Shown here: positions 14,001 to 44,438 of the stretch, piece by piece
How positions within the stretch are numbered: the stretch's first letter is position 1
Layout: each line of letters starts with the position of its first letter
Assembly (NCBI GenBank): GCA_965240325.2
Contig: OZ251223.1
Location: 3,224,001-3,288,000 of the forward strand
Length of the DNA: 64,000 nt
Direction: 5' to 3'
Source of the DNA: Rebecca billardiae RCC1528
Taxonomy: Eukaryota > Protista > Haptophyta
Translations under genes and position numbers: made by a program
Notes under the pieces: model-generated
Told to the model about the DNA's origin: nothing
Databases searched by the model: none
The model's input: the letters and a program-made list of their open reading frames with translations, nothing else

Positions 14001-15812
14001 CCTCCGCGCGGCCATCCTCGTCCGCGCGGCCGCCGCCGCCGCCGCCCGCCGCGCCGAGCGCGTCGCCGCCGTGCGCTTCGCGCAGCTCGCTCGCCTCAGA
14101 CTCGAGCACGGCGAGCCGGGTCATGAGCGCGCGCAGCGACGCGTCGTGCTCGCGCAGCAACGCCTGCAGCACGGGCAGGGCGGCGGCCGCGTCGCCGCTC
14201 TCGAGGGCGGAGGGCTCGGCCGAGGGCGGCAGCGTGCTGCGCAGCCGCGCCATCCGCTCCTGCGCGCGCGGCGCGCGGCGGGCGGCGCGCGCGCAGCGGG
14301 CCAGGGTGCCACGCGGCCTGCGATCAGCGCCCTGCCCGACGCCCCGCCCACCGCGCGCCGCGCCGCTCCGCCGCGCGCATGCTGTGCTGCGCACCTCGAC
14401 CAGCAGGCTGGTCCGCTGCATGGCGCGCACGGACGCGCCGTCGAGCTTGGGCGCGGCCAGCATCTCGATCTGGTCCGGCTCGCCTGCGCGCGCGCCGCGC
14501 GGCGGCGTGGCGTGCGCGCGGCGCGTGAGAGTGCGCGCGCGCTGCCGCCCAGGCGCCGGCGGAGGGGCGGCCGACGCGCAGGGGGCACGCGCGCGCGCTG
14601 CCGGCGGCGCGGTGGGCGCGGCGGCGCACCGCCCTGCCGCGCCGCATCGAGCATCGAGTCGATCGCGTGCGCGAGCTCCTCCGCGCGCCGCAGCTGCGCC
14701 TGCATCGCGCGGAGGCGCGCGTCCGCGTCGCTCGCGCCGCCGATCACGGTGCGCCTGCGCTCCTGCGCGCGCGCCACGTCGGCCGACCACGCCTCGCCGT
14801 CCGCCGCCCACGCGCCTCCAAAGTCGTCGCAAGCCTTGGCGAGCTCGGCGGCCTGTGTGCGCACCTGGCTGAGGCGCTCGCGCAGGCTGAGTGTCTTCTC
14901 CTCGAACGCGCGGCCGAGCTCGTCCGCCGTCTCCGCGTCCAGCCCCGCCGCCGCCGCCGCCGCGCGGTGCCAGTCGCGCGCGCTCTCGACGCACGCGCGG
15001 TCGTCCGCGTTGAGCGACTTGGGCAGCGGCGCGGCCGAGGCGGCGCGCCCCGAGCTGCCGCCGGCTCGCCCGCCGCTCGAGCCCGCGCCGACGGAGCTCC
15101 ACACGTCGGCCCTGCGCGCGGGCGCCGGCGCGCCGCTGGGCGCGGGCGCCGCGCGAGAGCCCGCCGCCTCCGTCGCTGCGCGGCGACGGGAGCGCGCGCC
15201 GAGCCGGGCGCGTGCGTCGGGCGGGTCGTGAGCCGTAGGGCGCGGGCGGAGGGGCGCGGGCGGAGGGGCGAGGGCGGCGCGCCGCGCGCGCACGCAACGC
15301 ACGCACCCGAGGCCGCAGAGCCGCTCGATCGCGTCGCGGCCTGCGCAGCGCCAGCGCCGACAGCTGGCGCGGGCTTGGCGCCGGTGCCGCCATCGCCCGA
15401 GCGGGCGCCGCCGCCCTCGCCGCCGCCGCTCGCGCCGCCGCTCGCGCCGCCAAACAGCGAACGAGACGGCGCGCTCGACGACGCGGCGGGCATCGCAAAC
15501 TGGCGCGCGCGCGAGAGCGCGGGCGGCTCCTTCTCGGGCTGCGAGCTGCCGCCGCCGGGCTGCTCCGCGCGCGAGGGTGCGGCGGGCTTGGGCGCGGCCG
15601 CGGCCGCTGCGCTCGGCTGCGCAGCCGGCGGCACGTTGCTGCCGCCGCCGTCAGAAGACGACGCGGCGGGTGTGGAGGCGGGCGGAGGGGCGGCGGCGGC
15701 GCTGACGCTCGGCTTCGAGGGGGGCTGCGAGGCCGGAGGCGCGCTGCTCACAGGCGGCGCGCTGCTCGCACCGCCCCCGAACAGCGAGCTGCCGGAGGTG
15801 GCCGTGCCGAGC

Positions 15813-15863
<51 letters not shown>

Positions 15864-15872
15864 AAGCTGAAG

Positions 15873-15913
<41 letters not shown>

Positions 15914-17863
15914 AAAGGGCGCTGGCGCGCTGCTCGAGTCCTTCGGCGTGCCGAAGAGCGAGCTCGCGGCGCTCGAGCCGAAAAGGCCGCCGCCACTCGG
16001 CGCCCGGCCCGTGCCTGGCCCGGCGCTTGCGCCCGCGCCGCCGAAACAGCCCGTGCTGCCGAGCGCGCCGCCCAGCGGCGCCGCGCTGACTGGCGGCGCA
16101 GGCGCAGCTGAGCTCGGCACCGCTGCCGCCGCCGCCGGCTTGCACAGGACGGGCGCGGGCGCCGAGGAGCCGCTCGGCGCCGAGCTGGCCGGCAAGGACG
16201 CAGCCATGCCCCCGCACGCTAGCGGCGCCGACGGCGGCGCCGCGCCCCCGCCGAACGAGAAGCCGCCAGCCGCCGCCCCAAAGGGCGCGCCGAGCGCGGA
16301 GCTCGCCGCCGCCACGGGCGTGGCCAGCGCGCCGCCGCCGAGCGCGCCACCGCCGAACGGGCTGCTGCCAGCGAGCGCTGGCGGCGCGCCGAACGGCGCG
16401 GTGGCGGGCGTGGGGCCCGGCGCGGGCTGCGCCCTGGCCTCCGCGCTCGCAGGCGGCGGCGTGGCGCGCGGCTGCGGCAGCGCCGTCGGCTCGCGCATGA
16501 AGGGATACGCACTCGCGCACCCCGGCGCGGCCTTGGCGGCGGGCGCCTTGGTGTGCAGCACGCACCATGCGCACAGCGTGCCGCGGCCGGTGAGCATCCA
16601 CACGACGGGCGAGGGCGGGAGCGGCTCCTCGCCGGCGACGAGCGGCACCGGCCTGCTCGCCGTCAGGTCGAGCGCGAGCCCCACCGCGAACTGCTCGGCG
16701 CCCGACTCGAGCAGAGGCACCACGGGGGCAAACGACTCGTCTCGCATCTGCCAGCGCTTGAGCTCGAGCGCAGGCGCCGCCTTGCGCGAGCCGGCGCACG
16801 AGAGCTGGTCCGAGTCGTTCGACGCGAGGACGAGCGTGCGCCACTCGGGCAGGTGCAGCGCGTAGCACGCGCGCCCGGCGCGCGGCTCCCACGGCTCGCC
16901 CTTCGAGTCCTCGAAGCGGCCGCCGGCCGCCATCGGGCCGAGGTTGAAGCACGGGCACTCGGCCGCGCCCGGCTGGCCGCACCACATCCAGCCGAGCGCG
17001 GGGTCGGCGGTGGCGGGCAGCTGCCACACGAGCGTGCTCGTGTCGTAATCGCTCGTGCTGTAGTCCACCACGAGCAGCTCCGCGCCCGCGCAATGCACCG
17101 ACAGCACCACCGCCTCCTCAGCGCCGAGCTGCGCGAGAGGCGCGGCGATGGCGGCGGGCGCGGACGCCGCCGCCGGGTCGCGCACGTGGACCGAGCCGTC
17201 GGAGCGGCCGCAGAGCACGTGGGAGCCGTCGGCGGACCAGCAGACGCACGTCACGCTCGGGTCGTCGCACACGGACGCGCACGTGAGCTCACCGGCCGCG
17301 CCGGCCGCTGCCTCGGGCAGGCGGATGAGGCGCACGGAGCCGTCAGAGCTCAGGACGAGCGCCGCGCGCGCGTCGCTCGGGCTCCAGCGGATGGCGCGCA
17401 GGCGCGCATCGGCGGGCAGCTGGAGGTCGTGGGTTGCGATGGGTGCGACGCCCGTCGCACCGGGGCGCAGACAGCCGAGCTCAAAGACGTGCAGGCGAGC
17501 GCGGCCGTCGGCGCTGCCCACAGCGCACGCGCACACGCGCGTGTCGTCACACGTGAGCGCGAGCGAGAAGAGGGGTGCGTCGGCCGCGCCAGCGATGGGC
17601 ACGTCATGGAAGCACGGCGAGATGTCCTCGCCCGCGCACCACGCCGACTCGAGCGCACGGCAGCTCGCCCAGCGAAAGCCGCTCGGCGTCGCGTGGAGCA
17701 GCAGCCCGTGCGCGTTCGACACGCAGAGCACGTCGGCGCGATCATCCACGGGCCAGCTCTGCGAGTCGGAGCCCTCGATGAGCGTCGTTCGCCCCGTGTG
17801 CGACTTGTCGTTCTGCGAGTTCCGTCCGACGAACCGCACGAACTCGACCTCCTCGACGGACAT
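11053..17863 (-). CDS. NUP214: FG-nucleoporin Nup214/Nup159-like (beta-propeller, FG repeats, coiled coil, C-terminal FG repeats; predicted introns 15176-15306, 14484-14629, 14260-14394)
   Basis: N-terminal WD/propeller-like region from MSVEEVEF (VTCVCWSADGSHVLCGRSDGSV), SLFG/PFG repeats, a central heptad region and many AFGQP/TPFG repeats at the C-terminus. The splice sites restore the frame. Confidence 0.8.
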
Positions 17864-18659
17864 CGCGGGACGTGTCGGTCGCCGCTGCGACGACGGCTGC
17901 GCGCTTCGTCGGCTTGCGTGCCCGCCAGGCGCTGGCGACTTGCCGTGCCGTCTTGCCTTGTCCGGCTGCTCGAATGAGCAGCCCACGATGGCGGTCGTCA
18001 CTCACATAGTCACATCCGGCGCTGATCCCTTATCCCACTATGCCGCTAGCTATGACCTAGACAGAGGGACACACTGACTCGCTGACTCAGTCACTGAGTA
18101 CGGTACAGTATTACCGTAGTACAGTAGTAAGCTACCTAGTAGTACTCAGTACTTACAGGAGGCCATCAACCACAGCTGTTCAGACTGAGTCAATGCTAGC
18201 CTGCTGCTTCTACTTTCTAGCAGGGTTGAACCGCTTTGATTTCAGTCGGCAACATTCACCGTAAAGTACAATCTTCGTCATCTGCTTGGCCAACGCGCCA
18301 CACGTGGCATGCAGCATGACGGCGCAGCTCTGGCCTGATTCTTCGTCGGCAGCCGCTCGATCGTCGACAACTGGCTGTCTGGCAAGTCGCCGTAGGCGCA
18401 CGTTTGGCCGCTTCGAGTTCGAGATCGCCGAGACCCGAGCAGTGACTGTTAGTGGCTAGCTGCGCCTGCAGGCGCTCTCGGCGGCGCGGACGACCAGGCG
18501 GTCTGCGCGCGGATCTGATGAGGCCGCCAGCGCGGCGGGGCAATGCCAACTGCGCGACGTCGGACGCGCGGGTGGCACCGACTCGCCCTCCTCGAGACCG
18601 CCCATCACGGAATGGCGTGGATCAAGCCGTCGTTGCGCCGGCGCGGGAGTACGCGGCCT

Positions 18660-29800: not shown

Positions 29801-30145
29801 GCGCTCGAGCTCGAGTGCGCTGTGGCCATGTACGTGTGGCGCGCGACGGGCGGCACGCTCGACGCGGTGGACGTGGTGCCAACGGCCAGCTCGCAGCAGG
29901 AGCACACCGCGGCCGTCGCGTCATTCGACACGTTTGCGGTACTCTTCTCGGCCATGCCGCCGCCCGGTGGCGCGCGGGACCGACTCGTGCGCTGCGTGCA
30001 GCTCGCCACGCCACATCGCTTCAACGAGGTCGTTCGCGCGTACCTGCCCGTGGTCCGAGATGCGTGGGCGGAGCGCGGACTGCACGAAGACGAGGGCGTG
30101 GGTGACGACGTGACGCTGACGGAACGGACTGATCATGATTCATGA
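26821..30145 (+). CDS. Fusion protein: nucleoside-hydrolase-like domain + ~6 TM helices + degenerate TIR-like domain (predicted intron 27738-27879)
   Basis: LLVVTDPGPDPDD resembles the IU-nucleoside hydrolase Asp-rich motif; also ISGMTDFA, IQGG, NNQFDPESA and spliced KPYDVVAL. About six hydrophobic helices lie at ~28420-29065. The C-terminal DAYVVHAAADD...PRVWV...LAHLPTYLGRSRRLLLLAGP has a TIR-like pattern. Confidence 0.75.
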
Positions 30146-30294
30146 CCGCACGCCTGAGACGTGGCTCGTGACGGCACTCCTCACTGGCCTGAGACGCGGC
30201 TCGGAGAGTCGGACAGTAGACGGTCAGACTCAGTAGACGAGTCGTCAGTAGACTCAGTAGTTAACTACAAACTAGTAGACGATCGGCTCGGAGT

Positions 30295-30296
<2 letters not shown>

Positions 30297-30355
<59 letters not shown>
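30297..30355. repeat. (CT)n microsatellite
   Basis: Perfect CT run, degenerate to ~30410. Confidence 0.97.
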
Positions 30356-30356
<1 letters not shown>

Positions 30357-31131
30357 ACTCTCAGTCTCTGGCAACTACTCTCACTCTCTCTCGTCAGTCT
30401 CTCTCTCTCACTGTCAGTCCGTAGATGATTCACGCGTCTGCATCACTTATTCACCGGCTCGGACTGCTCGTCTGCAAACTAAGCTAAGCTATGATGATCC
30501 GATGCAGATCGCCCCCCCCCCCCCCAGAAGGCTGACCACTGAGCGTTCCGAGCGAAAGCCCGGGGCGGGGCGGCGCACCAAAAGGACAGTTCGACAGGAT
30601 TTTATAATGAGGTCGAGGACTTGCTTGGTATAGGTGGATTTAGGTGTGAAAAGCTGCGCGCATGTGAGTACGTACTGCGTATAGTTATCCCTCCGCGTGA
30701 ATAGATTTTTGCAGCTTCGGTCCTTCGCGTTTGTCCACAGCTGGCGCAACGCCATCACTAGTTATTAGTATCACTACCGATCAGCTGCCTGACTGACCGC
30801 TGCTGGGCCTGCAGGGAGTGCCGTAAGCTAGTGGACGTGTGCGTGGTACGCCGTACGACGCGCAATGGTGAATGGGCCATGGGGCTCATCACTATCAGCC
30901 TGCGGCGCAGCAGTCTCGGCCGGGTTATTAGCTTAGCTATGCTACGCGGCTAGTATAAAGTTACCCAGTTATTTGCGTCGTGAGAATTCAGATCAGAATT
31001 CTCAATTATATTCATCCGACAGTAAATCACATTCCGACAGCTGCTGCGATTTACAGCATTTCTTTTATCCTCCCTTTTTTCGCGGCTACTGCCGACTGCC
31101 GCGCGCCCACGTCACCACGTGGTACGCTCGG

Positions 31132-32343
31132 ATGGCCGGCCACAAGCGCGGCGCGCGCGATGCGGTGGAGGCGAGCGGCCGGAGGAACGACTCAGACGAT
31201 TCAGAAGAGGAGATCGAGATCGAGCTGGATGGCTCACTCATCGAGCTCGACTGCGGCTTCCTTGCCCGTGCGTGGGACGGCATGATTGACGATGCACGCA
31301 TGCGCACCCTGGAGGAGGAGGCGCGGATGCTGCCATCGGACACCACCTTCTGGACAACGCCGGATCGTGAGCCGAGCTCTGCGCTAGAGGCGTACGCGCT
31401 CGACGTGTGGCGTTTTCACATGGGCGCAGGCGCCTGCCCGCAGCTGTGCGACCCGCAACGAAGCGGGGTGGAGTTTTGGGTGCAGCGCAGGTCGAGCAGA
31501 CAGGCCCGTGCCGCGCGCGCCATCAATTGGCACTTTGACAAGGACGAGCGGCTGCGCGAGGATCACGGCGTGTTCGTCCACCCCTATCTGTCGACGGTCA
31601 CCTACACGTCGGACCTGAACGGCGCGCCCACGGTCGTCCTGCCTGTGCGGATTTCGTTCGACGGCCAGCAGCCCACGCCAGCACCATCTGGAGTGCCGAC
31701 CACGGGGCGCGGCGTTGTCAGCTTTCCGAAGCGCGGACGCCACCTTGCGTTCAATGGGCGGCTGCTGCATGGCTGCCCAGTCGAGCTTGCGCACGAGCCC
31801 CGCGGCGCATACGAGCGCATGACCATCCTCGTGAACGTGTGGGTGAATCACCGGCCTCGAGATGTGGAGGTGGCGCAGCCGCGGGACCAAGGGCACGGCG
31901 GCGGCAGTCGCGGCCCGGTTGGAGCCAAGCGCGCGCGCGCGCACGCCGCAGAGGCGAACCACGTTGAGCAGTGGCGTGCGCTCACCCTCGAGGGTGCCGC
32001 GCGAGTGCCAATGCACAGCCTCGCTGCGACGAGCAGGGCTGACAGCCGGGCTTTCGCCTGCCCTGTCGGCGATGTTGCCGAGGCGACCGTCGCACTGCCG
32101 GCAAGATCGCTCAAGCGGGTCGTGCGCTCAGCTGTGCGGGCTGTCACTGGCACTTCTCGGGCGAGCCCAGGCAGACATGCCGCGCGCCAGCCGCAGGCGA
32201 AAGACACGCCCGAGCTGAGCTCGCTGGCCGCGGAGATTGAGTGCGAGGTGTGTATGTTGGAGAGCCCCCCATGCGCAAATGATGACGACGACGACGATGG
32301 CGACACCGTCGACGATGGGGATCCGCGGTCATCTGATCTCTGA
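31132..32343 (+). CDS. Putative 2OG-Fe(II) oxygenase superfamily protein
   Basis: GVEFWVQ, WHFDKDE (HxD), LSTVTY, FNGRLLHG (distal His) and RMTILVNVW (2OG-binding Arg). Confidence 0.7.
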   Translation: MAGHKRGARDAVEASGRRNDSDDSEEEIEIELDGSLIELDCGFLARAWDGMIDDARMRTLEEEARMLPSDTTFWTTPDREPSSALEAYALDVWRFHMGAGACPQLCDPQRSGVEFWVQRRSSRQARAARAINWHFDKDERLREDHGVFVHPYLSTVTYTSDLNGAPTVVLPVRISFDGQQPTPAPSGVPTTGRGVVSFPKRGRHLAFNGRLLHGCPVELAHEPRGAYERMTILVNVWVNHRPRDVEVAQPRDQGHGGGSRGPVGAKRARAHAAEANHVEQWRALTLEGAARVPMHSLAATSRADSRAFACPVGDVAEATVALPARSLKRVVRSAVRAVTGTSRASPGRHAARQPQAKDTPELSSLAAEIECEVCMLESPPCANDDDDDDGDTVDDGDPRSSDL

Positions 32344-32757
32344 TGATGTCTGATGATTATGATTCCACCGTAGTAGCTCAACAATGACGTACTGTAGCCA
32401 TCTGCAAGACGAGCCTGGCCATCCCGCGGGCATCCGTGACCACTGTGTCCACTGTCGTTATCGGACAATCTACTAGCAGCGTTCATTTATTACAATAAGT
32501 TCTTGACGACGACGGTCCGTTGGCCGGACCCTCCGTCGGGACTCCGTGATAACGAGTACTCCGAGTATAACTACCGCCTGTGTCTTTAAATCATAGAATT
32601 AGTACGGTACGAGCAGGCGTGCAGCATAAATTAAATACTGTTGAGAGTGTTGAGTAGTGCTGTCAGACGGTCCTCCGGCGGCAACAAACCCTGCCGCCGG
32701 CTTTGATCGAGGCCGACACGCCACACTATGGGGCCCACATCACCTGAGGGCCAGGCC

Positions 32758-32860
32758 TTATTTCAAAAAACGTTATTTCAAAAAACGAAAATAACATGAA
32801 AGTGGTTCAAAATAGCCAAAATAGGACCATTTCCGTGTTAATTTCGTTTATTTTTGAAAT
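32758..32860. repeat. AT-rich tandem duplication plus imperfect inverted repeat
   Basis: TTATTTCAAAAAACG occurs twice; 32775-32806 pairs imperfectly with 32826-32860. Confidence 0.7.
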
Positions 32861-33542
32861 CCGATTCGCATGCCGAGCTGGCTAAGCACAGTTTATGAGT
32901 ACGGCTCGGGAGTAGCTAGGGTCCCAGTAGAAGTTCTATAAAAGATTTCGAGTTTTGGCATGCCGCGTATAGCCTACTATAGGGCACCGGGGACGCTGCG
33001 CACGCGCGGTGACTTCCGTAGGGCCCCAAGCAGACTGTTCAAGCCACATACACAGGCCAAGTCCATATCGCTGACCTCGGTGTAGACCGTAGCGTACGCA
33101 CAGGGCGTTCCCTGCCGCCATGGGGCCATGCGCACCTCGCCCGAATGCTGCCCGTCGCGGCTTCTCTGGCCCCACGGGCTGCCCATGGAGTGCCGCCGAC
33201 ATCCGCGAGTAGGTGCACACCTCCAAAACGGCCTCGGCGCACGGTTCAAACGACTGGACGCACGTGCGCACGTCCGCCCCCGTACGCCCTGACCATCTGG
33301 GCGGCCAGTGGCGCACATACCATGCAGCGCATCCACCGCGTCTGCAGCTCGCCAGCCGACCCGCACGTGTGCACGCTGGTCCACGGCTGGAGCGTGAGGA
33401 GAGACGCGACGAGCTCATCAGAGGGCGGGGCAGGAGGCCGGCGCGCGTGCTTCGACCACCCGTCATGCGCTCCGGACCGTGCCGTACGCGGTCGGCGTGC
33501 ACGAGCCTCGACTCGGCGCGCGCACGCGGCAGCCATGGCTGT

Positions 33543-33684
33543 TACAGTTTACTAAGAATAAGAGACGCACACAGCTCAGGCAGGCGAGATTGACGCCCGC
33601 CAACTGTCACCGCCCATGAAGCCGTCGCCGATGGTAGCGCCGCCGGAAAAATTCGTTCAGCCGTCCGCCTGCGAGGCCTGGATG
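33543..33684 (+). repeat. Dispersed repeat / element end (TA-CAGTTTACTA...), inverted copy at 39740-39889
   Basis: ~140-bp near-identical reverse-complement match with a few short indels. Confidence 0.85.
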
Positions 33685-34140
33685 CGGGCTGCGGCCGCCA
33701 CGCGGCGCGCTAGCGCCCGTCGTCCTCTGTTGTCCACAAAACGTCGTCGTCCGAACTCGCCGACTGGGCGCCGATGCGACAGCGCGCCGACAGGATGAGG
33801 ATGTAGTAGGGAATGTAGAGCCCCACTGTCGGTTGGGGAAGGTGTGTATCAAGCGGCATGACTGGTACGTCGCGTCCCGCCGGTCCGGGCGATTTCCTGC
33901 CGTGCCACCTTAAATCATAGAATAATGAGTTACTGTAGGTGAGTAGCCCGTACGTACTAGCCGATCCACCTGCAGAGCCGACGTAGCCGACACGCTCACA
34001 GCCTCACAGTGCGTGAGCGACGAGATTCCCGGCGGAAGCCGCGCGATCCGTCTCCTTCGCCGCGGCGGGCGCGGCCATCGAGCGCGTCGCCTAGTCTGAG
34101 GGTGCGGCGCGGCGGTCGTCGTCGATCAGCTCTCGTCCGC

Positions 34141-35226
34141 ATGGTTCCCGGTGCCGTCGTCGTGGTCGTGCTCATCTCTGCGCTCACGGGGGGCACTGGG
34201 AAACGCTCTTCGGATGGTGTCCCGCCCTCACTCTCGCGCAAGCATGGCCTACCCTGTGACATGTTCTCTGACTCGCCCGTCAACCTCAACGCGACAATTG
34301 CCGTGATGACAGCAGCGGTGCCACCGTATGCGCTGTGCACACGCAACAAGAATCTCGTGGACACTTTCGTGCGCGTGCATGGGAAGTGGCGCGACTGCGA
34401 CGTACTGCCGCGGCTACTTGATCTCGCTGCCGAGACGAAACCGCGCCGGGTCTTCGTCGATGTCGGTGCCAATATCGGTGCGTGCTCAATGCTCATGGCA
34501 GCGCGAGGCGGCATCCGTGTCGTGAGCTTTGAGCCCGAGCCCGACAACTACTACGCGTTGAAAGCGGCCATGGTGGCCAACGATTTTGGCCCAGGCGTGG
34601 ACATGCGCCTGGTCAACGCTGGCGCTTCTGACGCCAGCGCGACCGCAAACATTTACGTGGATCGAATCAATTCTGGCAACTCAATCGTGCGCATGCAGGG
34701 CGAGCCTGCCCCCACACAGCCAGCGCTTGGATCAAACGGTAAGGGGTTCGTACCGCGTGGAACGTCGTCCCAGATCGCGCTCACGACCCTTGACGAAGAA
34801 ATCCACGAGCACGTGCACCTGCTCAAGCTGGACTGCCAGGGATGCGAGTTGCACGCGCTGCGCGGTGCGCGCATGCTCATGCGCACGCATGGCATCGACA
34901 TCATCAAGTTCGAGTTCGCGCCCCACTTCGTGCAGGCGTTTGCCGGTGGAGACGGAACGAGCGCCGAGCAGCTGCTGTACTTGCTCATGGACAACGACTA
35001 CACCCTGTACCGCTGCGGGAAGGGGATGGGCCGCCTGCATCGCAACCAAGTGCGTCCACTCATAGAGCACCTTGCGGGCGACACGAGATTGGAACAGAAG
35101 GACAATGTGCGCAGACCGTCCCGCAATGGCCGTGGCGCACTATACACCGACCTCTATGCTGTCCATGCGCGCCTCGCCTTGTCTGAGATGCGCGTTCTGG
35201 CGGCTCTTGCGCCAAATGTATGCTGA
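34141..35226 (+). CDS. FkbM-family SAM-dependent methyltransferase with N-terminal hydrophobic anchor
   Basis: FVDVGANIG, FEPEPDN and LLKLDCQGCELHALRGA motifs. Confidence 0.88.
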   Translation: MVPGAVVVVVLISALTGGTGKRSSDGVPPSLSRKHGLPCDMFSDSPVNLNATIAVMTAAVPPYALCTRNKNLVDTFVRVHGKWRDCDVLPRLLDLAAETKPRRVFVDVGANIGACSMLMAARGGIRVVSFEPEPDNYYALKAAMVANDFGPGVDMRLVNAGASDASATANIYVDRINSGNSIVRMQGEPAPTQPALGSNGKGFVPRGTSSQIALTTLDEEIHEHVHLLKLDCQGCELHALRGARMLMRTHGIDIIKFEFAPHFVQAFAGGDGTSAEQLLYLLMDNDYTLYRCGKGMGRLHRNQVRPLIEHLAGDTRLEQKDNVRRPSRNGRGALYTDLYAVHARLALSEMRVLAALAPNVC

Positions 35227-35439
35227 TGTGATATGGTGATGCGTCATATTCGCGAGACAGCTGTGACACTGCTCAGGAGTCTGCCTGAGACACTGAGGGC
35301 ACTCACAGTAGCTAGCTACGTACCGGTAATGGGCGGTATATTCACGGTAGAAAGTCATCATCAGCATCGTCAATTGGCGGATTTTATTGGGCCGGACCGC
35401 GGACTACGAATGATATGCCATCACACTCCGGCCTACTAA

Positions 35440-35484
35440 ACTACAGTTTACTATGATTTAACGTGCACACTTGGTTAAGGCGTG
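35440..35484 (+). repeat. 45-bp dispersed repeat ACTACAGTTTACTATGATTTAACGTGCACACTTGGTTAAGGCGTG, copy at 51807-51851
   Basis: 1 mismatch in 45 bp. Confidence 0.85.
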
Positions 35485-35593
35485 ATTAACGCCATCCAAC
35501 GACACTGCACAAAGACACCGTCACAAAACAGACCGGCGCAGGGGGGCTCTGAGGCTGCCCTACTCTGCTACTGCTATAAAAATGATGATGAGT

Positions 35594-35660
35594 AGAGAGA
35601 GAGCTAGAGAGAGAGAGAGAGACTAGAGCTAGAGAGAGTGAGAGCAGAGAGAGAGAGAGA
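35594..35660. repeat. Degenerate (GA)n microsatellite
   Basis: GAGAGA runs interrupted by CTAG/GTGA. Confidence 0.85.
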
Positions 35661-36706
35661 ATACTACTACAGGGTCCCCAACAATTATTCGGACACTGAT
35701 TTTTGCTGACTACGGAGCCTGCTGACGATGAGATGGGCCAGAGGCTCCATGGACCTTACTCCTAGTCCTCGGATGACGACAGGAAGTCGTGGTTGCAGCG
35801 AGCGGCGCGCTCTGCGTGTGGCCAGGGCTGGCTTGAATGTACAGCTCAACCAACTAGCGGTTGGCTCTGAACAGGTCCACTGAGCCCCAGTGAGTGGCAT
35901 GCATGCTGAAATTCGTATCTGGCGCACGGTTGCATTTGACGGCGGGCGGGTTGGTGTGCGCACTAGTGGGCCTCCAGCGTTCGCTGCGGGTAGTGGCGCC
36001 GAGTGTAGCCCTTGCCTGCACGGCCAGAGCCGATCGACTGGCTGTGCAGCAGCTGTGCAAGAGAGGTGTGCAACTGTTACTGGTAGGCTGGACCGATCGG
36101 GCCATATGCTCCCGGTGTAGCGCTACGCCCGGGCTCGCCCAGGGCTGTCGAGTGCATGTCGACATAGTCACCGACCATGCCACGTTACTACTATAATATC
36201 TGGGCGGCCTTGAGCGGGCTCGCTGGCTACAGACATGCGCAGAAGCCACACGGCTGCTCCACAGCCCTCACGACCAGCCTTGTGCCGACTGTCCGCATGA
36301 CCCAGAGGGGCGCTCAACGCGGGCTGCCCGGCTATGCGCGGTCGCAGACAGACCTAGTGGGGTGCACACGAGCCGAGCTGGCCGCTCCTGACCCCGCGCG
36401 AGGCAGCCACAGGCCGTACGCTGAGCTGCTGCCCAAAGTGTCATCAGCATCATCCAGCAGTCGTTTAATACTATGTTGGAGACCCTGTATCCGATGATGA
36501 TATAGTAGTATCAACGATTACGACATATCAAGTACGACAACTCTGAGGCTGCGGGGCGTAGTTCATCGTTATACTTCGACGCTAGCTACCGCGCCTACTA
36601 AGACTCTGCTAGCAATGAAGAGTGAACCTCAGTGATGACTGAACCTGCTCATCAATTGTCACTAGAACTTGCAGCAGTCACTGTCATCAATCTGAATCTG
36701 CACAGG

Positions 36707-39076
36707 TTAAGGAACCTCCGAAGACAACGCGAACGCCGCCGCAGCGGCGCCACGACGACCAGCAAGCGCAGCAGCTCGCTCCTCAGCGTGCGGCAGGTGC
36801 TCGAGCGCAGTGCGCCTTTGGTGCGATCCATGATCGCCGTCAGCGGCACAGTTTGCGTCGACGACTGCGCGCAGTGCGAGCGCTGCGTCTGCAAAGAGCT
36901 CAGCAGCGTGCGAAGCAGCGCTCGCGTCGAGCTGGAGGCGCGCGCCGCGCTCGGTCGTCAGCACACCATCCACGACCTTCGCCTCCACTCCGCCCGTGGC
37001 GCGCAGCTCAGCCTGCTGCGCCTGCGCCATCAGCGCGCGCGCGCGCAGGAACGCGGGTGCGCACGCGCCTGGCTCGAGCGCGAGCGCCTGCTCGCTGTAC
37101 TCGCGAGTCCCCGTGTGGTTGCTCGCCTCGTCCGCGCGGATGGCAGCCTCGGTCAGGTGGCGCACTGCGAGGTGAGTGTCCCCGCTCACCGTGTACATGG
37201 CCGCCACCATGGACTGCAGCCACGCATCGCGCGGGTACTTCTCCAGCAGCTCCTTGAACAGGCCGAGCAGCGCGGGCGCCGCGCTGTTCACGGTGAACGG
37301 GCACGTGAGCGACGAGTTCAGGTGGCCGATCGCGTCGCGCACGCTGCCGCGCTGGATGTGCACCTGCGCCATGTGCCAGTCGAGGTCGCAGAACTCCGGG
37401 TCGATCCGGCGCGCGAGCTCGTACTGCCGCCACGCGCCCTCCCAGTCGCCGCGGTTCTTGTACAGCGTGCCCATCTGCAGCTGCAGCTTGGCGCTGTCGG
37501 GGCAGACGCGCACGGCGCTGATGAACGCGCTGTCGTTGTTCAGCCAGTCGAGGTTGCGCACCATCGTGCGCGAGGCCGCGGCGGCGCACAGCACGCCGAG
37601 CGCCAGCGCCGCGCCCGCGCGCCCACCGAGCGGCCTCGGCCGCACCGACGGCGCCCACAGCTGCGCCAGCAGCATGCAGAAGCCGACCGAGGGGATGTAG
37701 AGCAGCCGCTCAGCCACAAACGTGCCGATGTTGAACAGGATGTTCGAGGCGGGCACCCAGGGCAGCACGGCCCAGGCGAGGCAGCGCACGTCGCGGCACG
37801 CGGTGGGCGAGCCGTCGCGCACGGCGCGCCACAGCCGCGCGCACGCCCACCCCACGATCGCGCACGCCACGGCGAGGTCGCCCCACGCGCGCGCGTCTGC
37901 CATCGAGCGCACCAGCCTGATGCACTCGAACGAGTACTCGATGGAGAGCTCGCGCGGCCAGAGGAGCAGCCACAGGTGGTACACTTGGACGCGCAGCACG
38001 GAGAGCGCCCACGCGGGGCCCGGCCGGCCGCGCAGGGAGGTGAGCGGGTTCTCAGCCTTGCGCACGAGCCGCGGCGACGGCTTGGTCGCCGACCACGTCC
38101 AGTGCGCGGGCCAGAACGCCCACGGCGGCGGCGGCGGCGGCGGCGGCGCGCCGTACTTGAGGTCGTACGGCTCGAACGGGGACATGAGCGCGACGCGGAG
38201 GAGGAGATAGGCCACGCAGAGCACGGCGAGCGGCGCGAGCCGCCACGCGCCGCCTCTGAGCGTGCGCAGCAGCCGGCGGCGGTCGAATGGCTGGATGAGC
38301 GGCGCGCGTGCGCGAGCTTCCGCAGGGGCGCAGGGGTGCTGCTCCGAGGAGGGCGGCGCTGCCGGCTGCCTCGAGCGCAGCGGGGAGCGGCTGGCCTGCA
38401 GGATCACGAGCACTTCGTGCGCACCACACACCAGCACGACGAACAGGGCCGTCTCCTTGCTGAAGAGCGCCAGCGTGAAGAGCACGCACGTGCGCGAGAC
38501 GCAGCGCAGCTGGATGCCCAGCGGCAGCCCCTTCGCCCCCACCGCAGCGGCGTGCGCGTGCGCGAGGAAGGCGCACGCCATCAGGACGCACGCGAGCAGC
38601 TCGGCGCGGCCGACCACGTTGACGACCGCCTCGACGTGCACGGGATGGAGCGCGAAGACCGCGCCCGCGATGAGCGCGCGCTCGAGCGCATGTCGCTCCT
38701 GGCCGGTGCACGCGCCCGTCAGCCGCGCAACGAGCGCGGTCGCGGCGGCGTGGAGCAGAGCGTTCACAAGGTGGTAGCCCCATGAGCCCGGGCAGATGCG
38801 CACGTTGCACTCGGGCTTCCCGCCAGTGAAGATACTGTTGAGGCGATACGTGATTGTCGTGAGAGGGCGGTACGATTTGTGCGATGATTCGTCCCGGAGG
38901 TCCCTGCCCCAAAAGTCGTCGACAAAGACGCCCTTCAGAGGCGAGGTGTAGTGGGCATCCACATTCTCCATCACGGCAAGGTTGTCGTCGAACACGAAGC
39001 CGTTCCGGAGCGAGTTGAGGTAGACGACGGCGCTGAGAAGCGCGACGAAGGCCTGCACCTCGCCGAGCGAGCGCAT
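36707..39076 (-). CDS. TMTC-type protein O-mannosyltransferase with C-terminal TPR repeats
   Basis: YLNSL.NGFVFDD, DDFWG....SHKSYRPLT, HPVHVEAVVNVVGRAELL, SKET and AERLLYIPSVG, followed by TPR-like helices. Confidence 0.92.
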   Translation of the reverse strand: MRSLGEVQAFVALLSAVVYLNSLRNGFVFDDNLAVMENVDAHYTSPLKGVFVDDFWGRDLRDESSHKSYRPLTTITYRLNSIFTGGKPECNVRICPGSWGYHLVNALLHAAATALVARLTGACTGQERHALERALIAGAVFALHPVHVEAVVNVVGRAELLACVLMACAFLAHAHAAAVGAKGLPLGIQLRCVSRTCVLFTLALFSKETALFVVLVCGAHEVLVILQASRSPLRSRQPAAPPSSEQHPCAPAEARARAPLIQPFDRRRLLRTLRGGAWRLAPLAVLCVAYLLLRVALMSPFEPYDLKYGAPPPPPPPPWAFWPAHWTWSATKPSPRLVRKAENPLTSLRGRPGPAWALSVLRVQVYHLWLLLWPRELSIEYSFECIRLVRSMADARAWGDLAVACAIVGWACARLWRAVRDGSPTACRDVRCLAWAVLPWVPASNILFNIGTFVAERLLYIPSVGFCMLLAQLWAPSVRPRPLGGRAGAALALGVLCAAAASRTMVRNLDWLNNDSAFISAVRVCPDSAKLQLQMGTLYKNRGDWEGAWRQYELARRIDPEFCDLDWHMAQVHIQRGSVRDAIGHLNSSLTCPFTVNSAAPALLGLFKELLEKYPRDAWLQSMVAAMYTVSGDTHLAVRHLTEAAIRADEASNHTGTREYSEQALALEPGACAPAFLRARALMAQAQQAELRATGGVEAKVVDGVLTTERGARLQLDASAASHAAELFADAALALRAVVDANCAADGDHGSHQRRTALEHLPHAEERAAALAGRRGAAAAAFALSSEVP

Positions 39077-39290
39077 GCTCACAACGCGACCGGCGCGGTT
39101 GTCCGGTGTCTTATGGCTCCGGATTTATTCAGGTGACTCCGGAGCGGTGCCGGCTTGTCCGGGTGCCGTTGTGCCCGATGTGCCGCGGTCCAAGGGCGGT
39201 CCGGTCCGGCCCGGACCTCCCTTGCGCGGTGCAATGCCCAGCCCCAATCTCAAATCGGCCAGTGGCAATGTGCAGATGGTCGGAGCAAGG

Positions 39291-39560
39291 GGCTTACAAA
39301 ATACCACTGTGGGCGAAACACAGCTGTCGGATGCGATGTACATGAGACGGAAAGTGTTACCGGTCAGCGGAAAACACTGTGCGAAAAGTTTGAATCCGGG
39401 AAAGCGGGTAGATCTGTCATGACCTCATCATATTCTTCCCAGGCATTCCTGTGTTTTCCTCATACGAGCTCCCGGACACTTTCCCGTTTCCGTCTCATGT
39501 ACATCGCATCCGACGGGGCTCCTCACTGGCGCTTTCGCCCCCAGTGGTATTTTGTAAGCC
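39291..39560. mobile_element. ~270-bp MITE-like inverted-repeat element
   Basis: GGCTTACAAAATACCACTG / CAGTGGTATTTTGTAAGCC and GTCGGATGCGATGTACATGAGACGGAAA / TTTCCGTCTCATGTACATCGCATCCGAC. No clear TSD. Confidence 0.7.
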
Positions 39561-39739
39561 TGCCTTCAGTGTTCGGAGTCCGTATCGTCATCGTGATTCC
39601 GGAATGGAGCTGCTTCAGTGAGTACTTGCTGGTTGCGAGTAGCTATACTAGTAGTCTAGTCTTACTAAGGTAAGTAACTGTATACCGTAAGTAGTTTTGG
39701 GCGTTTTGGCGAAATGGCGAATGGTCGCAGGCTCCGCCT

Positions 39740-39889
39740 CATCCAGGCCTCGCAGGCGGACGGCTGAACGAATCTTCCGACGGCGCTATGTACCATCGGC
39801 CACGGCTTCATGGGCGGTGACAGTTGGCGGGCGTCAATCTCGCCTGCCTGTGAGCTGTGTGCGTCTCTTATTCTACTTAGTAAACTGTA
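39740..39889 (-). repeat. Inverted copy of 33543-33684
   Basis: Ends ...TAGTAAACTG-TA; matches the 33543 copy on the opposite strand. Confidence 0.85.
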
Positions 39890-39950
39890 CGTAATTGCGG
39901 GACAGACTCTGAGATCCAGATTCTGGATAATTCCCGCCTTTATAATCTTC

Positions 39951-40981
39951 TGTCGAAGGGAATGAAGAGCCCGAAACGACTGAGCTAAATCGGTTCGCGC
40001 CAACCGATTTAGCTCAGTCGTTTCGGGCTCTTCATTCCCTTCGACATAACCGTAAGTCTCCTGTGGGACACCCCGCGAGGGGCTGTAGTCCCGTCCAGTG
40101 TTCTGACGGATTTGTTGTCGAGGTTTTTCTCTCCCCGCCTGGTCTTTCCCAGGTGTTCCACCCTGCGTGCTCGTCTGCTCTGTGGCTTCGTAGAGACTCC
40201 GTCTTTTGTGGGCGGTGAGCCCTTCTTTGCTGCTGTGGCTTTGTGAGGCTCTTTTTGTGTCTTTGTTGTTCACCCGGGCGACTGTACCCGGAGGTTGCGC
40301 GTCGCGGACCGTGCTCGTTTTTTCTGTCGTCGTCTTTCTTTGTCGGTCATCTTCTTCGTGCTCCCCTCTTTCGTTCGTCTTTTTGCCGACTCCTCGCTTT
40401 TCATTCCCCCCCGGAGCCGCGAGGCTCTCGCGAGGTCGAAAGCGCTTCGCGTGAAAGGCCAAGAGTTGCCCGCGTCGGTCGGTCGCTGGATTCGAACAGG
40501 TGACTTTACGGTTGTGTCGAAGGGGGAATGAAAAGCGAGGAGTCGGCAAAAAGACGAACGAAAGAGGGGAGCACGAAGAAGATGACCGACAAAGAAAGAC
40601 GACGACAGAAAAAACGAGCACGGTCCGCGACGCGCAACCTCCGGGTACAGTCGCCCGGGTGAACAACAAAGACACAAAAAGAGCCTCACAAAGCCACAGC
40701 AGCAAAGAAGGGCTCACCGCCCACAAAAGACGGAGTCTCTACGAAGCCACAGAGCAGACGAGCACGCAGGGTGGAACACCTGGGAAAGACCAGGCGGGGA
40801 GAGAAAAACCTCGACAACAAATCCGTCAGAACACTGGACGGGACTACAGCCCCTCGCGGGGTGTCCCACAGGAGACTTACGGTTATGTCGAAGGGAATGA
40901 AGAGCCCGAAACGACTGAGCTAAATCGGTTGGCGCCAACCGATTTAGCTCAGTCGTTTCGGGCTCTTCATTCCCTTCGACA
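39951..40981. mobile_element. Non-autonomous foldback element: 460-bp TIRs capped by 96-bp palindromes, TG..CA ends, 5-bp TSD TCTTC
   Basis: 39951-40410 is the reverse complement of 40522-40981. 39951-40046 and 40886-40981 are self-palindromic. TCTTC occurs at 39946-39950 and 40982-40986. Confidence 0.92.
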
Positions 40982-41184
40982 TCTTCATATTATAATTATT
41001 AACGGGCTCCGCAGGTGGCGGGTGCTAGTCATACTAGTTGACTGTTGAGTCTAGGACTAGCCTCTACTGCTTACTAGTTGGGTCTCATGTAGTCGTCTTA
41101 AGTCTGATAGACTAGCTAAGCTATATATATATACATACGTCGTCTGTAAGACTACGCAGCTCGATCCCGCCGGCGCCTGCACTG

Positions 41185-41270
41185 ACTCATTCTATGATTT
41201 AACGACACAGGTAGGACGACGCGGGTCTCCTGATTCGTCGGCGGCAGTGCCCGATCGTCGACACGAAGTC
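41185..41270 (-). repeat. Inverted copy of 1036-1121
   Basis: Reverse complement matches 1036-1121. Confidence 0.88.
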
Positions 41271-41951
41271 GGCGTTGGTGGCAGAGCATAGCCTGCACCG
41301 CGATCGTAAAGCTTGAGCGCGGCCTTGAGCTGCTGGAGCGCGATCCACCTGCGCTGCGCGGCTCGCATGGCCCTGCTGTGCCCCGAGCGAGGGCGATGGT
41401 GCAGGTCCGGATGTCAGCTGGCAGTCTCAGCCGCTGGTAGCAGCTGGTCGTACCTGCCCCGTGCTCCCCGGGCAGTCGCGTACGCGCTTGCCGCTCGAGC
41501 CAGCTGGCTGGCTGGCGGCGGCTGGCGCTGCGGCGTCGTCCAGGGTGCGCTTCGTCCGCTGCTGCGGCAGCTCCTCGTCGTCCAAGTCGTCGCCCGGGGG
41601 CGAGTCTCGGTCCTCGTGGAGCGGGGCGCCTGCAGTCCGACGGCAGCTTATACCGTATTAATTAATTCCGGTTACTAGGTCTAGTAGTGATACTACGACT
41701 AAATAACTACGAGTAACGCGCCGGCCAATCAAGTTGAATGAGAGCCGTCGTATCATCGGTCAGACAAAAGTGTCAGATCGGGCCGGACGGCCGACGACCG
41801 ACCGTCAGCGGCGTCAGCCGTCTGCCGGGCCCGTGGCCGTCAGTCCGCGGCCCGGCCGCCGCATCAAAGCCATCGGACTATGAGTCGCCCGCCATCGCGG
41901 GCCGCGCGGGCTTCTGGCGCGCGACTCCGCGGACTCCACAGTGAGAGTGCC

Positions 41952-44186
41952 TCAGTACGCGTCATCGTACTCATCGTCCGAGTCGTCGCTGGTCTCGCCC
42001 CCGAAGTGCACGGCAATGGGCTGCGGCTCGGTCTCGTCCACGTCACCAGCCGCGGCGTCCTGCGCCGAACCACCCAGAGGCTCGGCAACAGGGTCTGCGC
42101 CAGCTCGCGCCGTGAGGCCGTTCTCCGGCTCAGCTAGCATGCTCTCGACTTGGGGCACCATGTTGGCCACCGCCCGCGACGTGATCTCGCGCTCAGCGCT
42201 CGCTGTGGGGGGCGCAGGAGGGGCAGCCGGAGTGTCGACCGCGGGCTTCGCACCAGGCGTTGCCGCCGGTGCTTGGTCGTCGTCGTCATCCAGGTCGACG
42301 ACGGTCGTCATCTTGTCCGCGTTGAGGTCGATCGTGATCCGTTCGCGAGCGGCCGAGCCAGCGCCGTGCGGCGCTGCAGCGGCGAGCGCCGAAGACCTCG
42401 GCGGCACGGCGTGCAGCGGACGCGCGATGGCCGGCACATGAGCGGCGCCGACAGGAGCACCGCTGCCGCCGCCAAGCATCGGCTGGGCGCACGCGCGCTG
42501 AGCGGCGCCTGCTGCATGCGCAGGCAGCACAGTGCTCGTGCACCTGCCCGGCTGCATCTGGGCCGTGGCGGCGCTCGCGCACGCCCCGCTCTGTGGCGGC
42601 GGGCCCTGATACGCGCAATGGCCGGCGCCGGCGGTCGGGGCTGAGCACGGCTGCCTGTACGCGCACGCGGGCGGCTGCGGTTGGTAGGGCATCGGCTGCG
42701 CGCACATGTGCTGCTGCTGAGGTGGTGGCTGCGGCTGCATCTGGTGTTGTTGCTGCCACGGAGGGCCGGACGGCGCGTTGAATGATGCCCCACACGCCGA
42801 ACCATAAGCCGGGTACTGCTGCGGATAGGGCAGTGGCGCGGCCTGCTGCTGTGGCGGGCACTGCCAAGGAACACCCTGAGCCGCCTGAGCAGAGCCGGCC
42901 GCCACCCCCCAGCACGGCTGCGGCTGCTGGAACGGCGGGCGCCACGCATTCCGCGCCGGCTGCTGCTGCGCCGCCTGCTGCCACTGCTGCTGCTGCGCCT
43001 GCTGTGCGTACTGCGATGGTTGCTGCTGCTGCTGCAGCGGCTGCTGCTGCTGCTGCGGCTGCTGCAGCTGCTGCAGCTGCTGCAGCTGCTGCAGCTGGGC
43101 CTGCGGCTGCTGCAGCTGCGCCGCTGGCTGCGACATCGAATGCGCTTGGTGCTGTGCCGCTGGGCAAGGTGCAATTGGCACCTGCGCGTTTGCCTGCCGC
43201 GCGGGCGCGAGGTCCACGAGCGCGCGTGCGAGGGGTCGCAAGTCCTCCAGCACCGCGGCAGGGAGCCTCGCCTTCAGATCCCACCAAAAGCGCGGCGCAG
43301 GCATCCCGAATCTCTGCCAGCACCGCTCAGCGAGCTCGTCGGCGCTGCCGGCGTGCACGAGGCTCAGCAGCAACGAGAGGACGCCGTTGAGCGCGCTATC
43401 CTGCACTGGCATGGGGAGCGCGCCCGCCTCGCCGATCACGTCGAGCGCGCGCATCCCCTGGTCTCGCTCGTGCTGGCCGAGCACGGGCGGGCAGCCATAC
43501 ATCGGCTCGTTGTGCATCTGGCCCGTGCGCTGCGTGCAGCGCAACACGGCCAGCCGCACGTCGGGCTTCAGCGGGGCTCGAATCGTCTTGGATGGTGGTA
43601 CAGGGCCCGGGCACAAGCCCTGCTGGGGTGCGCCCTGGAGCCCGTGGCCCTCCGCGGTCGTCGACGGGGCGGTAGCGCCGCTCAGCCCTGCGGTGGCGTG
43701 GCAGGCCTCGTACTCGCCAAATGAAGCGAGCGGGTCGGGCGACGTGCCGCTCGTCGCCGCGGCGGCCGCCGCGCACTGCGTGAGCAGCCTGGGCGGCCCC
43801 TGCCCGCTGGCTGCGGCGCCCTGCGAGCCCGCCACCCTTCCATCTGTGCGATGCTCCGCGAACGCCACAACGTGCGGCCGCTTGCGTGCATCAGACGGGA
43901 CCACGACCGCCCCAACTGTCACTGCGAGAGGTGTGGCACCGGTGACAACTGGATGGCTTGTAATCGGCACTGCAAGCGCAGCCGAGCCCGCGTGTGCATC
44001 AACACCCTCGTCGACCGCGTCCTCCTCCTCCGCTGGCGCCGCAGCCGGACCGTCATACGTGGCGACAAAGAAGTCGAGCGCGGATGTTGCGTCGGCGTGC
44101 GAACCCTCCGCGAGTGCCTTCCACGAGAAACGCGGAGCTTGACCGAGGCTCTCCCCAGCAACACGCACCGTGAATGTGCACGCCAT
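41952..44186 (-). CDS. Hypothetical protein with poly-Q/PQY-rich low-complexity domain and acidic C-terminus
   Basis: Long ORF with CAG-rich poly-Q, an acidic tail (SDDSDDEYDDAY) and a head-to-head arrangement with RCL1. No family recognised. Confidence 0.65.
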   Translation of the reverse strand: MACTFTVRVAGESLGQAPRFSWKALAEGSHADATSALDFFVATYDGPAAAPAEEEDAVDEGVDAHAGSAALAVPITSHPVVTGATPLAVTVGAVVVPSDARKRPHVVAFAEHRTDGRVAGSQGAAASGQGPPRLLTQCAAAAAATSGTSPDPLASFGEYEACHATAGLSGATAPSTTAEGHGLQGAPQQGLCPGPVPPSKTIRAPLKPDVRLAVLRCTQRTGQMHNEPMYGCPPVLGQHERDQGMRALDVIGEAGALPMPVQDSALNGVLSLLLSLVHAGSADELAERCWQRFGMPAPRFWWDLKARLPAAVLEDLRPLARALVDLAPARQANAQVPIAPCPAAQHQAHSMSQPAAQLQQPQAQLQQLQQLQQLQQPQQQQQPLQQQQQPSQYAQQAQQQQWQQAAQQQPARNAWRPPFQQPQPCWGVAAGSAQAAQGVPWQCPPQQQAAPLPYPQQYPAYGSACGASFNAPSGPPWQQQHQMQPQPPPQQQHMCAQPMPYQPQPPACAYRQPCSAPTAGAGHCAYQGPPPQSGACASAATAQMQPGRCTSTVLPAHAAGAAQRACAQPMLGGGSGAPVGAAHVPAIARPLHAVPPRSSALAAAAPHGAGSAARERITIDLNADKMTTVVDLDDDDDQAPAATPGAKPAVDTPAAPPAPPTASAEREITSRAVANMVPQVESMLAEPENGLTARAGADPVAEPLGGSAQDAAAGDVDETEPQPIAVHFGGETSDDSDDEYDDAY

Positions 44187-44438
44187 CCGCCCACCGCTAG
44201 AGTGCGCACTCCCCCGTCGCGTTCGAAGTGCCTCTGGGCGGAAGCGAAAGCTGCTGCCGGTCAAGGGCTGCCGCCGCGAGCGGCGCAGTCGAGCGTGAGA
44301 GTGGTCCGGACGCCCGCGTCCGGGAGCTTGCTGCCTCGACGACGATGCCGTGACGAAAGCGTGCTGGCCCTAGGCACAAAGCTCGACGATTGAGGACCGA
44401 GGCTGCAAGCGTTGGTCCCCTGTTCCCCGCGTACACGC
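44187..44438. promoter_or_regulatory. Putative bidirectional promoter Q-rich gene/RCL1
   Basis: Divergent start codons ~250 bp apart. Confidence 0.45.

What the first reader, a model, noticed from the sequence alone, without database searches (positions are those of the whole stretch)
39951..40981. Hairpin-capped foldback element: 460-bp TIRs ending in 96-bp palindromes, TG..CA termini and 5-bp TSD
Seen: 1031 bp with no credible ORF. Arms 39951-40410 and 40522-40981 are reverse complements around a 111-bp spacer. Each end is itself a 96-bp loopless palindrome (TGTCGAAGGGAATG...CATTCCCTTCGACA); the right is perfect and the left has one mismatch at 39996. The ends are therefore both direct and inverted repeats. 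The element is flanked by a TCTTC duplication. Known: TG..CA ends with 4-6-bp TSDs are the signature of retroviral-type DDE integrases (LTR elements, Ginger). Terminal hairpins characterise parvovirus-like or hairpin-telomere replicons. Inference: a recent insertion of a non-autonomous element that may replicate through hairpin-ended intermediates and borrow an integrase. This combination does not match a standard MITE class I know.
Basis: partly seen in the sequence, partly recalled or inferred. Interest (0 to 1): 0.85.

Follow-up and report, generated by a model that had tools for sequence, protein, structure and literature searches.

The report
Palindrome-capped foldback insertion, non-coding
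A 1,031-bp non-coding insertion in a GC-rich protist genome is one long inverted repeat whose two ends are 96-bp palindromes, most likely a stripped-down mobile element moved by an enzyme encoded elsewhere; it is unusual but has published relatives in architecture.

Summary
Arms 39951-40410 and 40522-40981 match at 459 of 460 positions around a 111-bp spacer. Each end is a 96-bp palindrome, the termini read TG..CA, and TCTTC flanks both sides. The long ORFs are a by-product of a T-poor strand and have no homologues. I add one feature: a third, degenerate copy of the body/cap junction at 40496-40536. The inverted repeat ends inside it, which suggests an internally deleted derivative of a longer element. 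No second copy exists in the window. None turned up in viral, metagenome or prokaryote contigs, phage or plasmid records, or 1.84 billion protein representatives. The source genome could not be searched, so family membership, copy number and mobility remain untested. Best reading: a non-autonomous element made almost entirely of its inverted repeats, inserted by a DDE or retroviral-type integrase supplied in trans. The hairpin-capped ends are not unprecedented. [quoted passage not shown] Classic Foldback, Ginger2/TDD and TRIM each fail at least one defining feature. Verdict: new variant of a known kind, moderate interest.

The parts
39946..39950 (.). Left copy of the 5-bp flanking direct repeat TCTTC (putative target-site duplication)
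39951..40981 (.). Whole element, 1,031 bp, TG..CA termini, non-coding
39951..40046 (.). Left 96-bp terminal palindrome (cap), with one mismatch near its centre
40047..40410 (.). Left body of the arm, 364 bp. The + strand is A-poor (7.4% A, 36.5% T).
40411..40521 (.). Unique 111-bp spacer, 62% GC, with no significant fold of its own (z +0.9). Its right end belongs to the third junction motif.
40496..40536 (+). Third, degenerate copy of the body/cap junction: about 19 nt of body-like sequence plus about 22 nt like the start of the cap. The inverted repeat ends inside it, so the left arm keeps only part of the motif (40396-40410).
40522..40885 (.). Right body of the arm, the reverse complement of the left body
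40886..40981 (.). Right 96-bp terminal palindrome (cap), perfect
40982..40986 (.). Right copy of TCTTC

Best explanation
This is a non-autonomous mobile element made almost entirely of its terminal inverted repeats. It is probably an internally deleted derivative of a longer element whose TIRs (at least 460 bp) end in palindromes. It sits in an AT-rich patch of an intergenic spacer, about 870 bp upstream of a TMTC-like gene. Shown: the anatomy, the flanking 5-bp repeat, the absence of coding capacity, and the near-identity of the arms. Inferred: an enzyme encoded elsewhere inserted it by staggered cuts 5 bp apart, as a DDE transposase or retroviral-type (rve) integrase does. Also inferred: each cap presents the terminal 48 nt in both orientations and can snap back into a 46-48-bp hairpin. 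That hairpin could serve as a doubled end-recognition site, or as a priming hairpin for copying the ends. Read-through transcription would give a long hairpin RNA as a side effect.
For: The inverted repeat stops exactly at TG/CA and is flanked by TCTTC on both sides, with a chance probability of about 0.001-0.003. Body and spacer resemble nothing in the flanks or elsewhere in the window, so the arms were not copied from neighbouring DNA. There is no coding capacity. The arms are 459/460 identical, pointing to a recent origin or homogenisation. The inverted repeat ends inside a third junction-like motif, as expected if an internal deletion removed the middle of a longer TIR element. TGTNR termini with 4-5-bp TSDs and AT-rich targets are documented for integrase-type DDE transposons (PMC2836005). 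TSDs of 5-6 bp (mavirus and Maverick/Polinton elements; 3-5 bp predominate in endogenous mavirus-like elements) or about 4-6 bp (polinton-like viruses), with TIRs of several hundred bp, are documented for rve-integrase virophages and polinton-like viruses. Palindromes at TIR extremities next to TSDs are reported for some of these.
Against: Only one copy is known. There is none elsewhere in the 64-kb window or in any collection I could search. A repeat family, variable TSDs and an empty site are therefore all undemonstrated. No transposase, integrase or virus-like gene lies in the window. One 5-bp repeat is suggestive but not proof. The element's GC (56%) matches the intergenic spacer around it (53-57%), so composition does not mark it as foreign.
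Confidence: 0.55

Rival explanations
1. It is a miniature satellite of a palindrome-capped virophage or polinton-like virus. It retains only the cis signals (capped TIRs). It would be copied through hairpin-primed end replication and integrated by the parent's rve integrase.
For: The 460-bp TIR is close to the mean TIR reported for Halocafeteria polinton-like viruses (485 bp). A terminal palindrome lies next to the TSD, as in their virophage subtypes 1, 2, 5 and 6 and PLV subtype 4. The 5-bp TSD fits rve integrases. The host looks like a marine protist.
Against: There is no capsid, ATPase, integrase or replication gene in the element or the window. No sequence match was found in 2.9 million viral contigs. 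Hairpin priming is only a proposed model even for the published elements.
Confidence: 0.2
2. It is not mobile. A local fold-back or template-switch event during replication or break repair produced the palindromes in two rounds, and the TCTTC repeat is coincidence or microhomology.
For: Perfect loopless palindromes and near-identical arms are what snap-back synthesis produces (my own knowledge). Only one copy is known.
Against: The arms and spacer have no source sequence in the flanks or the window. The inverted repeat ends exactly at a flanking 5-bp direct repeat. Identical palindromes at both outer ends are not expected from a single fold-back.
Confidence: 0.12
3. It is an assembly or amplification artefact, such as a fold-back chimeric read or an inverted chimera from whole-genome amplification.
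For: Inverted chimeras are a known artefact class (my own knowledge). Reads are not available here.
Against: It lies mid-contig between ordinary genes. It has an asymmetric unique spacer, one arm mismatch, symmetric caps and a flanking duplication. None of these is expected of a chimera.
Confidence: 0.05
4. It is an LTR-type miniature element (TRIM-like), read as 96-100-bp terminal direct repeats with TG..CA ends and a 5-bp TSD.
For: The caps are also direct repeats (39948-40047 against 40883-40982, 98%). The TG..CA ends and the 5-bp TSD fit.
Against: There is no TGG-initiated primer-binding-type site within about 15 nt after the left cap, and no polypurine run before the right cap (read). The 'LTRs' are perfect palindromes and the interior is itself an inverted repeat. 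Reverse transcription does not explain either feature.
Confidence: 0.03

Closest known systems
[quoted passage not shown]
   Same: TIRs of several hundred bp, with a palindrome at the very end of each TIR next to the target-site duplication. The elements are associated with rve integrases, and a hairpin-priming model has been proposed.
   Different: Those elements are about 24 kb and encode capsid, replication and integration genes, and the one palindrome whose length the preprint gives is 52 nt. This element is 1 kb, non-coding, with 96-bp palindromes and only 111 bp between the TIRs. No sequence similarity could be tested or found.
Foldback-type DNA transposons and palindromic MITEs (Drosophila FB, Tm1, Galileo)
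   Same: Long TIRs make up most of a short non-coding element, flanked by a TSD and mobilised in trans. The insertion site is AT-rich and partly symmetric.
   Different: FB and Tm1 TIRs are built of short tandem subrepeats with 9-bp TSDs, and Galileo has 7-8-bp TSDs. Here there are no tandem subrepeats, the TSD is 5 bp, and the ends are perfect palindromes.
Ginger2/TDD integrase-related cut-and-paste transposons (PMC2836005)
   Same: TGTNR termini (TGTCG here), 4-5-bp TSDs (5 bp in TDD-4 and TDD-5), and AT-rich targets.
   Different: Their TIRs are 50-180 bp and their target motif is RTATAY. Here the TIR is 460 bp, the TSD TCTTC sits between TTATAA hexamers, and no transposase partner is known.
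Snap-back (self-complementary) defective genomes of hairpin-ended DNA viruses
   Same: The layout is terminal palindrome, sequence, short centre, inverted copy of the sequence, terminal palindrome. This comparison rests on my own knowledge and was not tested.
   Different: This element is chromosomally integrated with a TSD. No HUH/Rep gene or nick site could be examined, and nothing suggests a single-stranded form.

Membership tests
MITE / non-autonomous TIR element (generic) | Terminal inverted repeats with sharp ends | tested here: met
   460-nt arms, 459/460 identical, ending at TG/CA
MITE / non-autonomous TIR element (generic) | Flanking target-site duplication | tested here: met
   TCTTC on both sides, chance about 0.001-0.003. 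This rests on a single instance.
MITE / non-autonomous TIR element (generic) | No coding capacity | tested here: met
   No Pfam hit and no homologues. The ORFs are explained by the T-poor strand.
MITE / non-autonomous TIR element (generic) | Dispersed multi-copy family with different flanks | tested here: inconclusive
   No other copy in the window or in the public collections. The source genome itself was not searchable.
Foldback (FB / Tm1 type) | TIRs composed of short tandem subrepeats | tested here: not met
   No tandem array in the arms
Foldback (FB / Tm1 type) | 9-bp TSD | tested here: not met
   The TSD is 5 bp.
Ginger2/TDD | TGTNR termini | tested here: met
   TGTCG...CGACA; criterion
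Ginger2/TDD | 4-5-bp TSD | tested here: met
   5 bp; criterion
Ginger2/TDD | TIRs of about 50-180 bp | tested here: not met
   460 bp
Ginger2/TDD | Integrase-related DDE transposase in autonomous relatives | not testable with these tools
   No coding relative was found, and there is no such gene in the window
Virophage / polinton-like virus with palindrome-capped TIRs | TIRs of hundreds of bp ending in a palindrome next to the TSD | tested here: met
   460-bp TIR, 96-bp terminal palindrome, TSD adjacent; criterion
Virophage / polinton-like virus with palindrome-capped TIRs | Capsid, packaging ATPase, protease, replication and integrase genes | tested here: not met
   The element is non-coding. 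At most it is a derivative, not a member.
Virophage / polinton-like virus with palindrome-capped TIRs | GC content below that of the host | tested here: inconclusive
   56% against 69% for the window, but the flanking intergenic DNA is 53-57%
TRIM / LTR derivative | Primer-binding site after the 5' repeat and polypurine tract before the 3' repeat | tested here: not met
   No TGG within about 15 nt of the left cap, and no purine run next to the right cap
Rolling-hairpin (parvovirus-like) replicon | HUH/Rep endonuclease and its nick site; single-stranded genome | not testable with these tools
   No such gene in the window. No comparator motif was used, because none came from a tool.

The most novel reading that the evidence does not exclude
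The element is a natural minimal satellite of a hairpin-capped virophage or polinton-like element. It would consist of two capped TIRs and 111 bp, carrying only the cis signals needed for hairpin-primed end copying and rve-type integration. It would thereby define which sequences suffice for that still hypothetical replication mode.
Probability: 0.15. Interest if true: 0.75.

Novelty: new variant of a known kind. Interest (0 to 1): 0.45.

Why it matters
Palindromes capping the TIRs of integrating virus-like elements have only just been noticed, and their role is open: they may prime replication from a hairpin, or they may be an accident. A 1-kb non-coding element that keeps only capped TIRs and still shows a fresh-looking insertion footprint suggests that the caps and TIRs are the functional cis part. 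It would also give a compact marker for finding the coding parent and its integrase in this poorly sampled, GC-rich protist lineage. If instead it is a lone fold-back duplication, it is a curiosity of repair.

Tried and rejected
- **Cap pattern scans.** The pattern (14 nt, a gap, 14 nt) gave 0 hits in viral, metagenome and prokaryote-genome contigs.
- **Short degenerate end pattern.** It gave 5 viral and 47 metagenome loci. All are single 19-21-nt chance hits with no extension. One is a contig labelled as a human gut metagenome; it is microbial, a chance hit, and was not pursued.
- **Other DNA seeds.** Cap-centre and body seeds gave nothing in viral contigs. blastn against phages and plasmids gave nothing.
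- **Protein route to other copies.** The 182-aa arm ORF gave nothing. The 353-aa ORF gave 0 hits among 1.84 billion representatives.
- **Exact look-up of ten window ORFs.** None is in the collection, so the source assembly could not be reached.
- **Host identity.** The best named hits are only 40-53% identical: Diacronema lutheri, an Alexandrium transcriptome and Prymnesium. A related Logan contig (L001) carries no copy.
- **Rfam.** Only sub-threshold generic matches of the caps to miRNA hairpin families, which reflect the perfect stem alone.
- **Bacterial promoter and terminator scan.** Uninformative.
- **Readings rejected.** TRIM/LTR (no primer-binding or polypurine signals). Classic Foldback (no subrepeats, wrong TSD). 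Two independent insertions of a 467-bp unit (the inner ends lack their own duplication). Local duplication of flanking DNA (no source sequence).

Full report
**Observation.** The repeat finder gives arms 39951-40410 and 40522-40981 (460 nt) with 111 nt between them. It also gives zero-spacer palindromes at both ends. A script finds a single arm mismatch at 39996, which is also the only flaw in the left 96-bp palindrome; the right palindrome is perfect. The first 30 nt of the cap occur four times, at both ends on both strands, and nowhere else in the window; 0 are expected by chance. As single-stranded DNA the caps fold at -58 and -60 kcal/mol (z about -19). The whole element folds as one 460-bp stem at -687 kcal/mol, and the spacer has no fold of its own (z +0.9). 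The ends are TGTCG...CGACA, and TCTTC flanks both sides. A 5-bp match in that position has a probability of about 0.001 from flank composition, and 0.003 empirically at this spacing in the window.

**Coding capacity.** Mechanical ORFs of 353 and 182 aa cross the element. The body is strongly skewed: on the + strand the left body has 7.4% A and the right body 7.4% T, so stop codons are rare on one strand. These ORFs have no Pfam match. They have no homologue in the word-indexed search, and none among 1.84 billion representatives. The element is non-coding, so there are no genes whose breaks could be counted.

**New anatomical detail.** A third, degenerate copy of the junction between body and cap lies at 40496-40536. 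It has about 19 nt like the body next to the cap, then about 22 nt like the start of the cap. It spans the right end of the spacer and the inner start of the right arm. The left arm holds only part of the motif (40396-40410), so the inverted repeat ends inside it. The simplest reading is that the arms are the remains of longer TIRs that carried a subterminal repeat of the end sequence, and that the interior was lost. Otherwise the arms contain no tandem subrepeats.

**Context.**
- The window is 69% GC (60-83% locally) and carries ordinary eukaryotic genes. These include a cNMP-binding, ion-transport and ankyrin giant ORF, kinases, C2-domain proteins, SPX and EXS, legumain, RNA cyclase and a nucleoporin-like repeat protein.
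- The closest named proteins are only 40-53% identical: the haptophyte Diacronema lutheri, an Alexandrium transcriptome and Prymnesium. Stramenopile proteins score only slightly lower. The host is therefore an unsampled GC-rich protist.
- No window ORF is in the protein collection by exact look-up, so the source assembly was unreachable.
- The element sits in a 2.9-kb low-GC spacer (53-57% GC, against 56% for the element). It lies between a TMTC/DUF1736 gene (36707-39082, minus strand) and the 3' end of the ORF at 41952-44264.
- The insertion point is AT-rich, with TTATAA hexamers on either side.
- No transposase, integrase or virus-type gene is present in the window.

**Search for relatives.**
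- There is no second copy in the window.
- The cap pattern gave nothing in viral, metagenome or prokaryote-genome contigs.
- A short degenerate end pattern gave only single 19-21-nt chance hits.
- Further seeds and blastn against phage and plasmid records gave nothing.
- Copy number, TSD variation, an empty site and a coding parent therefore remain untested. This is the main weakness of any interpretation.

**Mechanism.** I take it to be a non-autonomous element inserted by an enzyme that makes cuts staggered by 5 bp. The sharp inverted-repeat boundary at TG/CA, the flanking duplication and the absence of any local source for the arms argue for insertion rather than local duplication. Termini of the form TGTNR with 4-5-bp TSDs and AT-rich targets are documented for integrase-related Ginger2/TDD transposons (PMC2836005). 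For rve-integrase virophages, Mavericks and polinton-like viruses, TIRs of several hundred bp are documented. Their reported TSDs are 5-6 bp for mavirus and Maverick/Polinton elements, predominantly 3-5 bp for endogenous mavirus-like elements, and about 4-6 bp for polinton-like viruses (PMC8547959, PMC12220804). The closest architectural precedent is a 2026 preprint on Halocafeteria seosinensis. There, virophage subtypes 1, 2, 5 and 6 and PLV subtype 4 have palindromes (52 nt in one subtype) at the TIR extremities next to the TSDs. [quoted passage not shown] The authors propose that the palindromes form hairpins that prime replication, and they also allow that the palindromes may be accidental. 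Mean PLV TIR length there is 485 bp, against 460 bp here. Whether the caps act as doubled end-binding sites or as priming hairpins is inference. Near-identity of the arms means recent origin or homogenisation.

**Membership.**
- The element meets the generic criteria of a non-autonomous TIR element, except for a demonstrated multi-copy family.
- It fails classic Foldback: no subrepeats, and a 5-bp rather than 9-bp TSD.
- It fails Ginger2/TDD on TIR length.
- It fails TRIM on primer-binding and polypurine signals.
- It cannot be a virophage or PLV member because it has no genes; at most it is a derivative.
- Rfam gives only sub-threshold hits of the caps to hairpin miRNA families, which reflect the perfect stem.

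**Rivals.** These are a virus-derived mini-satellite (0.20, overlapping the best explanation), a local fold-back repair product (0.12), an artefact (0.05) and a TRIM-like element (0.03).

**Verdict.** The structure is real and unusual. It is most likely a recent insertion of a TIR-only derivative of a palindrome-capped element. It is a new variant of a known kind rather than a new class. Interest is moderate because a single copy cannot yet show mobility or mechanism.

Noticed in passing
window 33543, 35442, 39878(-), 51809; and 1102(-), 32584(-), 33908(-), 35451, 41192, 51818: Two short motifs recur in low-GC intergenic spacers. TACAGTTTACTA occurs 4 times (0.01 expected) and CTATGWTTTAACG occurs 6 times (0.23 expected). 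They lie next to each other at 35440 and 51807. They may be a promoter, a transcription-start signal or the end of a repeat.
   Followed up: partly
window 39737-39889 vs 33543-33687; 41185-41270 vs 1036-1121: Conserved non-coding blocks (91% and 96.5% identity, inverted) bracket the foldback element, and each starts at one of the motifs above. One copy of the first block lies upstream of the TMTC gene and the other upstream of the FkbM-type ORF. No Rfam match at E<=1 for the copies at 39737-39889 and 41185-41270; the paralogous copies were covered only by the gathering-threshold scan.
   Followed up: partly
window 39291-39560: A second, older-looking imperfect inverted repeat lies 400 bp left of the element. 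Its arms are about 74 nt and 80% identical, with a spacer of about 133 nt and no clear flanking duplication.
   Followed up: partly
window 39640-39700, 41020-41130, 41655-41720: Low-GC stretches rich in CTAG/ACTAG and in stop codons occur in the intergenic spacers.
   Followed up: no
window 11000-18000: GC reaches 82-83% here, with dense GCC/GGC-type repeats, within long ORFs. One ORF has a NUP159/214-type beta-propeller, so this is probably an FG-nucleoporin gene.
   Followed up: no
window 30000-36000: This is the lowest-GC gene-bearing segment (59-61%). It holds an FkbM-type methyltransferase ORF (34009-35226) and a 456-aa ORF with no family match. It could be acquired DNA.
   Followed up: no
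window 39948-40049, 40885-40982: The caps give sub-threshold Rfam matches to several miRNA precursor families (mir-5985, mir-3202, MIR405). All are below the gathering scores and reflect the perfect stem only.
   Followed up: yes
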